Source: Octopus sinensis
Taxonomy: Eukaryota
Length of the DNA stretch: 64,000 nt
NCBI RefSeq assembly: GCF_006345805.1
Contig: NC_043001.1
Span: 44,640,001 to 44,704,000, forward strand
Reading direction: 5' to 3'
Shown here: piece after piece, positions 11,470 to 61,313 of the stretch
How positions within the stretch are numbered: the first letter of the stretch is position 1
Layout of the letters: every line of letters begins with the position of its first letter
Notes under the pieces: model-generated
What the model saw: the letters and a program-made list of their open reading frames with translations, nothing else
Databases searched by the model: none
Told to the model about the DNA's origin: nothing
Program-made: the position numbers and the translations under genes

Positions 11470-12534
11470 ATGTCCCTTATCAACAGAGAAGCTGTTCTCT
11501 GTTGCTGGATGACCCTTGTCTGTCTTGGAACTGTACTTGATGCCATGGTAATAGAAAGGACGTTCCGTGACCCTTTTGAGCACCCACTTGAGCGAATGAT
11601 CATGCATAATGAAACAGGAGAGCTTTACGTTGGTGCTGTTAATAATTTATTTAAATTATCTGCTGATTTGAAACTGATGGAAAATGTCATCACAGGCCCT
11701 GCCGATGACAACCCCAAATGCCCACCTCCACTTTTACCTTGCAAAGAACAAAAGAAAAGTACAAACAGCCACAATCAGGGGTTAGTATTTGATTACAGTC
11801 GTGACTCAATTATCGTCTGTCTGTCCTTGTTCCATGGTGCCTGTCATGTCCGGAAGCTGAGTAATGTTACTGCTGTTGATGAACAAATGCCAAAACCTAT
11901 TGTATCAAATCATGAAGACAGCTCAACTGTATTCCTCACCGCACCAGGGCCAAATGGTGATGCTCTTTATGTCGCTTCACGCTACAGTAACCATGGAAAC
12001 AAGCGCTACCGTGACCTCGTGCCCTCTATCAGCAGTCGAAACCTGCAAACTCTAGAGTTTACATACAGAGATGCATCTGGAAGCAGCAAGGTTACTGTCC
12101 TACCCAAGTACCGAACACAGCATTTCGTGAACCCAGTTCATGCATTCTCACATGGAGGTTTTGTTTACTTCATTACAACCCAGCCACGCGCAAAAGACCA
12201 AAACTCCCCCCACGTCACAAAACTAGCTCGGATCTGTCAGAAGGACAAGAAGTTCGAGTCTTATGTAGAAGTTCGTTTGGAGTGTCGTCGTGGCAGTAAG
12301 TTGTACAATCTTGCCCAAGCTGGTTACTTATCAAAAGAAAGTGGTGGGAAGTTGTATGTTGCATTTGCCATGGGCAAGGTACAGTCAGATGCACCTTTAC
12401 CTTATAGTGCAGTCTGTATTTATGATATGCAAGATGTGATTACGAAATTTGAAGAAAACATCAGAGAATGTCATAATGGTATTGGAGAAACAGGACTTCA
12501 TTATTTACAACATTCAAAACCTTGTGAGAAGCGA
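11470..12534 (+). CDS. Coding exon 1: signal peptide and most of the Sema domain ([10 protein letters not shown]...PCEKR)
   Basis: Acceptor ttttcag ends at 11445, ATG at 11470, hydrophobic leader, Sema motifs ([40 protein letters not shown]). Donor GTAAGT at 12535, phase 0. Confidence 0.95.

Positions 12535-61313: not shown

What the first reader, a model, noticed from the sequence alone, without database searches (positions are those of the whole stretch)
11470..61313. Complete plexin ectodomain joined to a MET-family kinase (Met-LP architecture)
Seen: Sema, three PSI and about six IPT modules (about 1200-aa ectodomain), then TM and a TK fold with no plexin GAP/RBD. Known: vertebrate MET/RON have one PSI and four IPT domains. 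I recall a Met-like RTK class with a full plexin ectodomain being reported in Lophotrochozoa and Echinodermata; to my knowledge its ligand and function are unknown. Automated annotation may label the gene plexin or HGF receptor and miss the hybrid. Inference: it may be a semaphorin receptor with RTK-style output.
Basis: partly seen in the sequence, partly recalled or inferred. Interest (0 to 1): 0.7.

Follow-up and report, generated by a model that had tools for sequence, protein, structure and literature searches.

The report
Octopod plexin-ectodomain receptor with dead Met-type kinase
This is an intact 27-exon cephalopod gene of the already published "Met-LP" receptor class (a complete plexin outside, a MET-family kinase inside), but its kinase and those of its mollusc orthologues lack the catalytic aspartate, so it probably signals as a pseudokinase and not as a working receptor tyrosine kinase.

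Summary
A + strand gene spans exactly 11470-61313: 27 GT-AG exons, 4,800-nt CDS, 1,599 aa. An independent 1,597-aa Argonauta hians protein (86% identical end to end) and two intron-free transcript contigs from relatives support the model. The protein has a signal peptide, Sema, 3 PSI, 6 IPT (each above Pfam's cut-off), one TM segment and a MET-family kinase domain. There is no plexin GAP domain.

It is the octopod orthologue of Aplysia Met-LP1, the mollusc founder of the Met-LP class published in 2019. The architecture is therefore known.

The kinase reads HHN for HRD, DIG for DFG, and Asp for the alpha-C Glu. The catalytic Asp-to-Asn change is present in all 8 assessable members of the clade (cephalopods, bivalves, gastropods) and in about 1 of 118 other Met-family kinases. 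The domain is nevertheless as conserved as the ectodomain, and the clade shares juxtamembrane and C-terminal tyrosine motifs. This resembles HER3. The most likely reading is a plexin-type, probably semaphorin-binding, receptor pseudokinase that is phosphorylated by, or regulates, a partner kinase. I found no report of this in the literature I could search.

The parts
11470..61313 (+). Whole coding region of the Met-LP gene: 27 exons, 4,800-nt CDS, 1,599 aa, 9.6% coding; introns 134-11,049 nt
11470..12534 (+). Exon 1, aa 1-355: start codon, signal-peptide-like segment (aa 1-25), N-terminal two thirds of the Sema domain
   Evidence: (81% to Argonauta)
23584..23766 (+). Exon 2, aa 356-416: Sema
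24136..24264 (+). Exon 3, aa 417-459: end of Sema
   Evidence: Sema 60.5 bits
27219..27319 (+). Exon 4, aa 460-493: PSI1
   Evidence: PSI 34.3 bits
30157..30301 (+). Exon 5, aa 493-541: end of PSI1, start of IPT1
31512..31680 (+). Exon 6, aa 542-598: IPT1 (TIG_plexin)
   Evidence: 42.1 bits
31930..32020 (+). Exon 7, aa 598-628: end of IPT1
32870..32981 (+). Exon 8, aa 628-665: PSI2 (PSI_PlexinA-B)
   Evidence: 30.4 bits
34175..34291 (+). Exon 9, aa 666-704: end of PSI2, start of IPT2
35656..35760 (+). Exon 10, aa 705-739: IPT2 (TIG_2)
   Evidence: 73 bits
38528..38627 (+). Exon 11, aa 740-773: end of IPT2
39658..39824 (+). Exon 12, aa 773-828: PSI3
   Evidence: 26.7 bits
40671..40822 (+). Exon 13, aa 829-879: IPT3
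   Evidence: TIG 44.1 bits
42554..42659 (+). Exon 14, aa 879-914: end of IPT3
44477..44613 (+). Exon 15, aa 915-960: IPT4
   Evidence: TIG 46.7 bits
45409..45573 (+). Exon 16, aa 960-1015: end of IPT4, start of IPT5
47063..47156 (+). Exon 17, aa 1015-1046: IPT5 (added by hand; missed by the first-pass model)
   Evidence: 100% over 21 aa; TIG 36.3 bits
49649..49903 (+). Exon 18, aa 1047-1131: end of IPT5, start of IPT6
51520..51675 (+). Exon 19, aa 1132-1183: IPT6
   Evidence: TIG 22.8 bits
53045..53312 (+). Exon 20, aa 1184-1273: stalk, transmembrane helix (aa 1208-1232, 53117-53191), and the juxtamembrane motif [14 protein letters not shown] (53222-53263) that is conserved across the clade
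   Evidence: (97.8%)
54199..54318 (+). Exon 21, aa 1273-1313: juxtamembrane region and start of the Gly-rich loop
55414..55497 (+). Exon 22, aa 1313-1341: Gly-rich loop GKGNFG (intact) and beta-3 VAVK (Lys kept; 55476-55487)
57100..57284 (+). Exon 23, aa 1341-1402: alpha-C helix reads FLRD (57132-57143), so the Glu equivalent to MET E1127 is Asp; hinge
57419..57528 (+). Exon 24, aa 1403-1439: catalytic loop reads HHNLAARN (57500-57523; codons CAT CAC AAT), so the catalytic Asp is Asn and the HRD Arg is His
57854..58016 (+). Exon 25, aa 1439-1493: DIG in place of DFG (57885-57893); the activation loop has FY where MET has Y1234/Y1235; [11 protein letters not shown]
59395..59531 (+). Exon 26, aa 1494-1539: kinase C-lobe
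   Evidence: 97.8%
61130..61313 (+). Exon 27, aa 1539-1599 plus stop: end of the C-lobe and the C-terminal tail ending [10 protein letters not shown] (61281-61310), conserved across the clade

Best explanation
The locus is the octopod orthologue of the lophotrochozoan Met-LP receptor. It is a type-I membrane protein whose whole extracellular part is a plexin-A-like ten-domain ectodomain (Sema, PSI1, IPT1, PSI2, IPT2, PSI3, IPT3-6). Its intracellular part is a MET-superfamily kinase domain instead of the plexin GAP. Shown here: the gene model, the domain order, orthology to Aplysia Met-LP1, and the kinase sequence. The kinase has lost the catalytic base (HRD to HHN), the DFG Phe (DIG) and the alpha-C Glu (Asp). 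It keeps the Gly-rich loop, the beta-3 Lys, the catalytic-loop Asn and the DFG Asp. All 8 assessable mollusc orthologues share the loss of the catalytic Asp, yet the domain stays under purifying selection. Inferred: the domain is a pseudokinase, probably still able to bind nucleotide, like HER3. The ectodomain probably binds a semaphorin and changes the receptor's oligomeric state as in plexin-A. Output would then go through the conserved pseudokinase fold acting as a scaffold or regulator, and through conserved tyrosines (juxtamembrane NYIP, KDYEG and QYISELL; tail STEYLEVI, which fits both the TxYxx(V/I) consensus and the Y-hydrophobic-x-V pattern of MET docking sites). These tyrosines would be phosphorylated in trans by a partner kinase, either the canonical Met paralogue or a cytoplasmic tyrosine kinase, and would recruit SH2 proteins.
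For: Gene model: validated end to end by Argonauta P0136 and exon by exon. Single mRNA in relatives: intron-free contigs L001 and L002 (5.2-5.3 kb) each carry one ORF from Sema to kinase and align to the window protein as one HSP over aa 26/7-1598. Domains. Ectodomain closest to the full plexin-A1/A4/A2 ectodomains (E about 1e-151 over aa 39-1169), against MET at 1e-56 and 1e-39. Kinase closest to MET (258 bits), then RON (233), then Mer (about 222). Orthology: window Sema-PSI against Aplysia Met-LP1 320 bits, Plexin-1 238, Plexin-2 223, Met 103; as a control, octopus plexin-A1 matches Aplysia Plexin-1 best. NJ trees: the Met-LP clade has 100% support in both the Sema-PSI and kinase trees and is separate from the canonical Met clade, also 100%. 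Catalytic degeneration; Asp to Asn in 8 of 8 assessable clade members against 1 of about 118 other Met-family hits. Constraint: window against Argonauta identity is 89.6% in the kinase, 88.6% intracellular, 86.0% in the ectodomain; kinase-tree branch lengths are 0.60-0.69 against 0.55-0.63 for active Mets. Conserved juxtamembrane and tail motifs. The HER3 pattern (alpha-C His, HRN, accessible ATP site, allosteric activator) is in Table 2 of PMC13259870. PTK7 interacts genetically with plexins and physically with plexin-A1 (PMC11196218).
Against: No enzymology has been done. HER3, with the same Asp-to-Asn change, keeps weak activity (my own knowledge), and the ATP-binding elements are intact here, so residual or unconventional catalysis cannot be excluded. 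No ligand, partner kinase or phosphorylation site has been shown. The semaphorin-binding surface was not examined. The HER3 asymmetric-dimer mechanism is not known to operate in the Met family. Two bivalve models (Sinanodonta VAVT/GYG; Pinctada with a scrambled N-lobe) may contain prediction errors, so the picture in bivalves rests mainly on Solemya. The trees are neighbour-joining only, and the deep nodes are unresolved. My literature search covers open-access text only.
Confidence: 0.6

Rival explanations
1. It is a catalytically competent receptor tyrosine kinase: semaphorin-type ligand binding drives trans-autophosphorylation and classical RTK output.
For: The full-length kinase fold is present (Pfam 1.4e-80). 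The Gly-rich loop, beta-3 Lys, catalytic-loop Asn and DFG Asp are retained. One activation-loop Tyr is kept. The domain is strongly conserved. Some kinases that lack canonical residues keep activity (my own knowledge).
Against: The catalytic base Asp is Asn in 8 of 8 assessable clade members across three mollusc classes. The DFG Phe is lost in all of them and the alpha-C Glu in most. Cephalopods have also lost the HRD Arg. One bivalve model lacks the beta-3 Lys and the DFG Asp. The canonical Mets in the hit list, including mollusc ones, keep these motifs, except Mytilus P0098 (NFG).
Confidence: 0.2
2. It is a decoy or ligand sink: the plexin ectodomain sequesters semaphorins or blocks plexins, and the intracellular part is functionally irrelevant.
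For: Catalytic residues are lost. The ectodomain is complete and plexin-A-like.
Against: The intracellular region is at least as conserved as the ectodomain (88.6% against 86.0%; TM 100%). The juxtamembrane and C-terminal tyrosine motifs are conserved from cephalopods to bivalves and gastropods. Branch lengths are not inflated. A dispensable domain would have decayed or been lost.
Confidence: 0.1
3. It is a gene-model artefact: a plexin-like ectodomain gene and a separate downstream Met-like kinase gene have been wrongly joined.
For: In Lottia the ectodomain and the kinase are annotated as two separate models. There are no RNA data for the window's own species.
Against: Phases are continuous across all 26 introns, with no stop. 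The TM and juxtamembrane exon 20 links both halves. The Argonauta prediction is collinear. Two intron-free transcript contigs in relatives carry both halves in one ORF.
Confidence: 0.03

Closest known systems
Met-LP RTK (Met-like with plexin ectodomain), e.g. Aplysia californica Met-LP1 XP_012936725; Junqueira Alves et al. 2019, PMC6374515
   Same: Complete plexin ectodomain, TM and intracellular tyrosine-kinase-type domain. The window's Sema-PSI matches Aplysia Met-LP1 better than any other Aplysia Sema-PSI protein in the paper's alignment. Lophotrochozoan host.
   Different: This is a cephalopod member not covered in the paper. The paper treats the family as RTKs and contains no occurrence of 'pseudokinase', 'kinase activity', 'kinase-dead' or 'HRD'. 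Here the clade's kinase lacks the catalytic Asp. I could not inspect the Aplysia kinase sequence itself because that file is not held.
Plexin-A (mouse plexin-A1/A2/A4 ectodomains 5L56, 5L5G, 5L5K; octopus plexin-A1 XP_036358669.1)
   Same: The same ten-domain ectodomain, alignable from end to end (E about 1e-151). No furin site.
   Different: There is no cytoplasmic RasGAP/RBD domain; a kinase-fold domain stands in its place. It is a separate gene from the true octopus plexin-A1 (36% identity over exon 1 by tblastn; 39% by phmmer).
MET / RON (HGF and MSP receptors)
   Same: Closest solved kinase domains (258 and 233 bits). Sema-PSI-IPT-TM-kinase logic. Y-hydrophobic-x-V tyrosine in the tail.
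   Different: 3 PSI and 6 IPT instead of 1 and 4. No furin cleavage site. The kinase lies outside the canonical Met/RON clade. HRD, DFG and alpha-C Glu are degenerate. One instead of two activation-loop tyrosines. No TYVN/YVHV bidentate docking site.
HER3/ErbB3 receptor pseudokinase
   Same: The same type of substitution pattern: the catalytic Asp is Asn and the alpha-C Glu is lost, while the Gly-rich loop, beta-3 Lys and DFG Asp are kept (Table 2 of PMC13259870). Tail tyrosines are available for phosphorylation in trans.
   Different: Unrelated ectodomain and a different kinase family. The DFG Phe is also lost here. There is no evidence for an asymmetric-dimer activator mechanism in the Met family. 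This is convergent, not homologous.
Plexin-A with the PTK7/Off-track pseudokinase co-receptor
   Same: A plexin-A-type ectodomain working together with a catalytically dead RTK-like domain (PMC11196218). Met-LP would combine both in one polypeptide.
   Different: PTK7 is a separate protein with an Ig ectodomain and a different kinase family. The analogy is functional and untested.

Membership tests
Met-LP (PMC6374515) | Structurally complete plexin ectodomain: Sema, 3 PSI, 6 IPT | tested here: met
   All ten modules are above Pfam's curated cut-offs. End-to-end alignment to the plexin-A1/A2/A4 ectodomains.
Met-LP (PMC6374515) | Single-pass TM followed by an intracellular tyrosine-kinase domain instead of the plexin GAP | tested here: met
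   TM at aa 1208-1232. PK_Tyr_Ser-Thr 1.4e-80, no Plexin_cytopl hit. No GAP-coding sequence in the window.
Met-LP (PMC6374515) | Sema-PSI groups with the lophotrochozoan Met-LP and not with Met or Plexin-1/2 | tested here: met
   Best match is Aplysia Met-LP1, 320 bits against 238, 223 and 103. Mollusc Met-LP clade at 100% bootstrap in the NJ tree.
Met-LP (PMC6374515) | Ectodomain and kinase on one transcript | tested here: inconclusive
   Shown for two relatives from intron-free contigs and predicted for Argonauta. No RNA data for the window's own species.
Canonical MET/RON RTK | Truncated ectodomain: Sema, one PSI, four IPT | tested here: not met
   3 PSI and 6 IPT.
Canonical MET/RON RTK | Catalytically intact kinase (VAVK Lys, alpha-C Glu, HRD, DFG) with tandem activation-loop tyrosines | tested here: not met
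   D, HHN, DIG and FY at the equivalent positions; only the Lys is kept.
Canonical MET/RON RTK | Kinase domain inside the Met/RON clade; C-terminal YVxV/TYVN docking site; furin site in Sema | tested here: not met
   Separate clade at 100%. The tail is [10 protein letters not shown]. No R-x-K/R-R site in the ectodomain.
Plexin | Cytoplasmic split RasGAP domain with Rho-GTPase-binding insert | tested here: not met
   No PF08337 hit. The octopus plexin-A1 cytoplasmic region finds nothing in the window.
Receptor tyrosine pseudokinase (sequence definition: lacks at least one of the VAIK Lys, HRD Asp, DFG Asp) | Loss of the HRD catalytic Asp | tested here: met
   The codon at 57506-57508 is AAT, Asn. 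The change is shared by 8 of 8 assessable clade members.
Receptor tyrosine pseudokinase | Absence of phosphotransferase activity | not testable with these tools
   Needs an in vitro kinase assay on the purified intracellular domain.
Semaphorin receptor | Direct binding of a semaphorin to the Sema domain | not tested
   Only overall similarity to plexin-A ectodomains was shown. Interface residues were not analysed, and binding needs experiments.

The most novel reading that the evidence does not exclude
Mollusc Met-LPs are an ancient, conserved lineage of receptor pseudokinases within the Met superfamily, which has none among the eight human receptor pseudokinases. The catalytic Asp was lost before cephalopods, gastropods and bivalves diverged, in a HER3-like pattern. 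The result is a plexin-A-type, presumably semaphorin-sensing, ectodomain permanently joined to a dead kinase scaffold. It would relay its signal through a partner tyrosine kinase and conserved juxtamembrane and tail tyrosines, a single-chain counterpart of the plexin-A/PTK7 pairing. The open-access literature I could search does not appear to describe this.
Probability: 0.5. Interest if true: 0.6.

Novelty: new member of a known kind. Interest (0 to 1): 0.42.

Why it matters
The architecture itself is not new. Met-LP was named in 2019, and its ligand and output are still unknown. This analysis contributes three things:
1. A validated full-length cephalopod gene model for a gene that databases label as a plexin or an HGF receptor.
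2. Evidence that in molluscs the "RTK" half cannot be assumed to be an enzyme, which changes which experiments are informative. Partner-kinase and scaffold assays become more relevant than autophosphorylation read-outs.
3. A possible new receptor-pseudokinase lineage, in an animal group valued for its nervous system, in which semaphorin/plexin-type guidance input may be wired to tyrosine-phosphorylation signalling by a route not seen in flies, worms or vertebrates.

Tried and rejected
- **First-pass gene model.** It pulled in four false exons from intron 1 (13070, 16831, 17972, 18980), derived from transposase and low-complexity sequence, and a repeat-derived exon at 49157. It extended exon 25 wrongly from 57801, and it missed exons 17 and 24. 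I corrected all of these by hand, and Argonauta confirmed the corrections.
- **Protein-like ORF at 37290-37376.** Rejected as an exon: no Pfam hit, no Argonauta support, and it is not needed for phase continuity.
- **Possible missed micro-exon at the exon 20/21 junction.** Bivalves and gastropods have 13-17 extra residues there. Rejected because Argonauta has the same junction.
- **Word-indexed protein searches with exon 1 and with a rough concatenate.** These gave only fragments and plexins.
- **Organism of the two transcript runs.** No paper mentions SRR6926326.
- **Pseudokinase census paper PMC6997932.** Not held.
- **Aplysia and Capitella Met-LP full sequences.** Not among the held supplement files, so their kinase motifs remain unchecked.
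- **Leech P0025 as a possible annelid Met-LP with a live kinase.** There is only one weak PSI-like hit upstream. Unresolved.
- **Rfam and tRNA scans of the window.** Nothing found.
- **Structure prediction.** Not run.
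Full report
**1. What is in the window**

The window is AT-rich animal DNA (about 37% G+C) with many microsatellites and transposon remnants. On the + strand, translations of short open frames between 11470 and 61313 show Sema, PSI, IPT, transmembrane and kinase peptides in order.

I trained a codon log-odds model on 24 unambiguous coding blocks. I then ran a splice-aware dynamic programme anchored at the ATG at 11470 and the stop ending at 61313.
- transposase and low-complexity "exons" in the 11-kb first intron;
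- a repeat-derived exon at 49157;
- a wrong 5' extension of the DFG exon;
- a missed IPT exon and a missed catalytic-loop exon.

I corrected these by reading the junctions. The curated model has 27 exons, all GT-AG, with consistent phases and one open 4,800-nt CDS of 1,599 aa.

**2. Independent support for the model**

An exhaustive search with exon 1 found P0136, which is GAB1598516.1, "plexin-A4-like isoform X1 [Argonauta hians]".
- It aligns to my model 1-1599 against 1-1597 at 86% identity with four gap positions.
- Each of the 27 exons has its own tblastn hit.
- From this identity I infer that the window comes from an octopod cephalopod.

Two further full-length relatives, P0179 and P0138, come from intron-free contigs of 5.2-5.3 kb assembled from sequencing runs SRR6926326 and SRR32833658.
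- Each carries a single ORF from Sema to kinase.
- Each aligns to the window protein as one continuous HSP over aa 26/7-1598.
- So ectodomain and kinase are on one mRNA in at least two relatives. RNA from the window's own species is still lacking.

**3. Domain architecture**

Pfam on the whole protein gives Sema, PSI (3 stretches), TIG_plexin, TIG_2, TIG (4 stretches) and PK_Tyr_Ser-Thr (1.4e-80, covering model positions 2-257 of 258). There is no plexin cytoplasmic domain.

Scanned separately, every ectodomain module passes its curated cut-off:

| Module | Pfam bits |
|---|---|
| Sema | 60.5 |
| PSI1 | 34.3 |
| IPT1 (TIG_plexin) | 42.1 |
| PSI2 (PSI_PlexinA-B) | 30.4 |
| IPT2 (TIG_2) | 73 |
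| PSI3 | 26.7 |
| IPT3 | 44.1 |
| IPT4 | 46.7 |
| IPT5 | 36.3 |
| IPT6 | 22.8 |

Other features:
- There is one signal-like hydrophobic segment at the N-terminus and one TM helix (aa 1208-1232). There is no furin-type site in the ectodomain.
- Against solved structures, the 1,207-aa ectodomain aligns over aa 39-1169 with the complete plexin-A1/A4/A2 ectodomains (E about 1e-151). It aligns much less well with MET (1e-56 for the IPT part, 1e-39 for Sema).
- The intracellular part matches the MET kinase best (258 bits), then RON (233), Mer (about 222), Axl, and then RET and Tyro3. The nominal top hit in that list is a chain matched over two kinase-domain stretches, whose scores add up.
- The cytoplasmic GAP region of the true octopus plexin-A1 (P0145, XP_036358669.1, 1,883 aa) finds nothing in the window beyond chance.

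**4. What it is, relative to the literature**

Junqueira Alves et al. [quoted passage not shown] They inferred two independent origins and stated that the ligands are unknown but may be semaphorins. A 2022 review repeats this.

I extracted the Aplysia Sema+PSI sequences from the paper's own Nexus alignment. The window's Sema-PSI scores as follows:

| Aplysia protein | Bits |
|---|---|
| Met-LP1 | 320 |
| Plexin-1 | 238 |
| Plexin-2 | 223 |
| Met | 103 |

The control behaves correctly: octopus plexin-A1 matches Aplysia Plexin-1 best (407 bits).

Neighbour-joining trees give these results:
- In the Sema-PSI tree, the mollusc Met-LPs form a clade with 100% support. It is separate from a canonical Met clade, also at 100%. 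The deep nodes are unresolved.
- In the kinase tree, the same proteins form a clade with 100% support. It lies outside the canonical Met/RON clade (100%), which contains mollusc, hemichordate, amphioxus and human Mets, and it is separate from a clade of echinoderm HGFR-like kinases.

The gene is a bona fide Met-LP.

Orthologues are named "plexin-A4-like" (Argonauta, Littorina) or "Hepatocyte growth factor receptor" (Sinanodonta, Pinctada). In Lottia the gene appears to be split into an ectodomain model and a kinase model on a scaffold of the same size.

**5. The part that changes the interpretation: a degenerate catalytic core**

The window protein differs from human MET at these positions:

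| Position | MET | Window protein | Window coordinates |
|---|---|---|---|
| Gly-rich loop | intact | GKGNFG, intact | 54312-55424 (spans the exon 21/22 intron) |
| Beta-3 Lys | CAVK | VAVK, Lys kept | 55476-55487 |
| Alpha-C Glu (E1127) | Glu | Asp (FLRD) | 57132-57143 |
| Catalytic loop | HRDLAARN | HHNLAARN (codons CAT CAC AAT) | 57500-57523 |
| DFG | DFG | DIG | 57885-57893 |
| Activation loop Y1234/Y1235 | YY | FY | 57921-57926 |

This is not a private mutation or a sequencing error.
- **Argonauta** has HHN and DIG.
- **Solemya, Lottia and Candidula** have HRN with DYG, DCG and DYV respectively.
- **The two transcripts** have HGN/DYG and HRN/DYG.
- **Sinanodonta** has HRN/GYG, and VAVT in place of VAVK.
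- **Across the whole set:** in a 128-sequence alignment, the catalytic Asp is Asn in all 8 assessable clade members and in only 1 of about 118 other Met-family hits. That one hit, P0019, also carries an HRDLAARN motif elsewhere. The remaining non-canonical rows are N-terminally truncated fragments that still have HRD and DFG.
- **Alpha-C Glu:** it is replaced in most of the clade (D, H, T or Q), with one exception.

The domain is nevertheless not decaying.
- Between the window and Argonauta, the kinase is 89.6% identical, the whole intracellular region 88.6%, the TM 100% and the ectodomain 86.0%.
- Branch lengths in the kinase tree are 0.60-0.69, against 0.55-0.63 for active Mets.
- The clade shares motifs outside the catalytic core: juxtamembrane [14 protein letters not shown], then (P/Q)YIxELL, and a C-terminus QPLxAx...G(S/A)(T/D)EY. 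In cephalopods, both transcripts and Pinctada this reads GSTEYLEVI(E/G) or, in Pinctada, GSQEYLEVIG.
- Several canonical invertebrate Mets and human MET instead keep the TYVN-type docking site.

**6. Most likely mechanism**

By the sequence definition used in the field, a protein lacking the HRD Asp is a pseudokinase. The pattern here is closest to HER3 among the human receptor pseudokinases listed in Table 2 of PMC13259870: Asn for the catalytic Asp, alpha-C Glu lost, and the Gly-rich loop, beta-3 Lys and DFG Asp kept. HER3 binds ATP and works as an allosteric activator and phosphorylated scaffold. None of those eight human receptors belongs to the Met family.

I therefore propose the following, marked as inference.
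- The plexin-A-like ectodomain senses a semaphorin-type ligand, as plexin-A does.
- The dead but conserved kinase fold, together with the conserved tyrosines (Y1244, Y1252, Y1277, Y1594), acts as a regulated scaffold.
- A partner phosphorylates those tyrosines in trans. The partner could be the canonical Met paralogue that molluscs also have, or a cytoplasmic tyrosine kinase.
- The tail TEYLEV fits TxYxx(V/I) and also the Y-hydrophobic-x-V pattern of MET docking tyrosines. This is a direct reading of the sequence; its function is untested.
- The known genetic and physical link between plexin-A and the pseudokinase PTK7/Off-track (PMC11196218) gives a functional precedent for pairing a plexin-A ectodomain with a dead kinase.

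My confidence by layer:
- About 0.95 that this is an octopod Met-LP gene with the stated structure.
- About 0.7-0.75 that the kinase is catalytically inactive or severely impaired.
- About 0.4-0.5 for the scaffold and partner-kinase mechanism and for a semaphorin ligand.

**7. Rivals**

- **Active RTK.** This is possible because the ATP-binding elements are intact and HER3 keeps trace activity. However, it must explain the clade-wide loss of the catalytic base, the DFG Phe and the alpha-C Glu while paralogous Mets keep them.
- **Pure decoy receptor.** The conservation of the intracellular region and its motifs argues against this.
- **Mis-joined gene model.** Phase continuity, the Argonauta model and the transcript contigs argue against this.

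**8. Novelty and limits**

The architecture is already published, and this locus is a new cephalopod member of a known kind. The founding paper contains no occurrence of "pseudokinase", "kinase activity", "kinase-dead" or "HRD". The only other paper that mentions Met-LP does not discuss catalysis. Searches combining pseudokinase, plexin and mollusc terms found nothing relevant. The main pseudokinase census is not in the library, so an earlier report cannot be excluded.

I could not inspect the kinase sequences of Aplysia Met-LP1 or Capitella Met-LP1. Whether the loss is specific to molluscs or wider is therefore open. A leech kinase with intact HRD and DFG and a similar C-terminal ...YLASINA tail hints at a live annelid relative, but its ectodomain could not be identified.

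The trees are neighbour-joining on modest taxon samples. No structure prediction was run. No enzymology, ligand binding or expression data exist for this gene.

**9. Other content of the window**

- Intron 1 contains two mariner-type transposase remnants on the - strand and a Tc1-type DDE_3 remnant on the + strand.
- An interspersed repeat of about 230 bp occurs at least 22 times in introns and flanks, and never in exons.
- No tRNA or Rfam family is present.
- The homologue tblastn searches and the open-frame lists showed no second gene in the 11.4 kb upstream or the 2.7 kb downstream.

Noticed in passing
window 13614-14093 (-), 15463-15873 (-), 14305-14571 (-), 16805-17071 (+): The 11-kb first intron holds degraded DNA-transposon ORFs: two mariner-type Transposase_1 fragments (43.5 and 72.3 bits), an HTH ORF, and a Tc1-type DDE_3 fragment (34.9 bits). 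A naive gene finder splices some of these into the CDS.
   Followed up: yes
window, e.g. 36649-36881, 55734-55964 (-), 58366-58537, 58700-58960, 60578-60737; 23 HSPs in all: An interspersed repeat of about 230 bp (SINE-like; its translation reads ...[17 protein letters not shown]...) has at least 22 copies at 72-84% identity, on both strands, all in introns or flanks. No tRNA or Rfam match, so its class is undetermined.
   Followed up: partly
window 21203-21760 (-): A 186-aa open frame in intron 1 has no Pfam hit. It may be part of a degraded retroelement.
   Followed up: partly
window 37290-37376 (+): A protein-like open frame ([29 protein letters not shown]) lies in intron 10. It has no Pfam hit and no Argonauta counterpart, so I did not treat it as an exon. 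An alternative exon cannot be excluded without RNA data.
   Followed up: yes
window 53330-53520 and 57540-57640: Long (TC)n and (CAT)n-type microsatellites lie shortly downstream of exons 20 and 24. Microsatellites (TA, CA, TC) are abundant throughout the window.
   Followed up: no
window 57500-57508 (exon 24) and the exon 20/21 junction 53312|54199: There are two cephalopod-specific features within the clade. The HRD Arg is also lost (HHN, against HRN elsewhere). About 13-17 juxtamembrane residues present in bivalves and gastropods (e.g. VKADMNGQIPDNK) are absent in both the window and Argonauta.
   Followed up: partly
P0137 and P0018 (Lottia gigantea, scaffold of 1,238,503 bp): The Lottia Met-LP appears to be annotated as two separate gene models, an ectodomain-only protein of 943 aa and an HRN-type kinase fragment of 268 aa, on a scaffold of the same size.
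   Followed up: partly
P0149 (Pinctada imbricata KAK3101113.1) and P0205 (Sinanodonta woodiana KAL3853671.1): The Pinctada model has tandem NTVAI(K/R)ALQGKEQD repeats where the kinase N-lobe should be, and it lacks the catalytic loop. The Sinanodonta model lacks about 50 aa of the C-lobe and reads VAVT/GYG. These are either gene-model errors or further decay of the kinase in bivalves.
   Followed up: no
L003 (Helobdella robusta KB096080.1) 5704-5808 and 10001-13344: The leech kinase P0025 keeps HRD and DFG but ends ...SSNHYLASINA, resembling the Met-LP tail. It has a weak PSI-like tblastn hit 4.3 kb upstream. It could be an annelid Met-LP with a live kinase.
   Followed up: partly
L001 (SRR6926326) and L002 (SRR32833658): Two full-length Met-LP transcripts come from unidentified organisms. 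L002 groups with Lottia at 100% bootstrap and is probably a gastropod. L001 branches at the base of the clade and is the only member that keeps the alpha-C Glu.
   Followed up: partly
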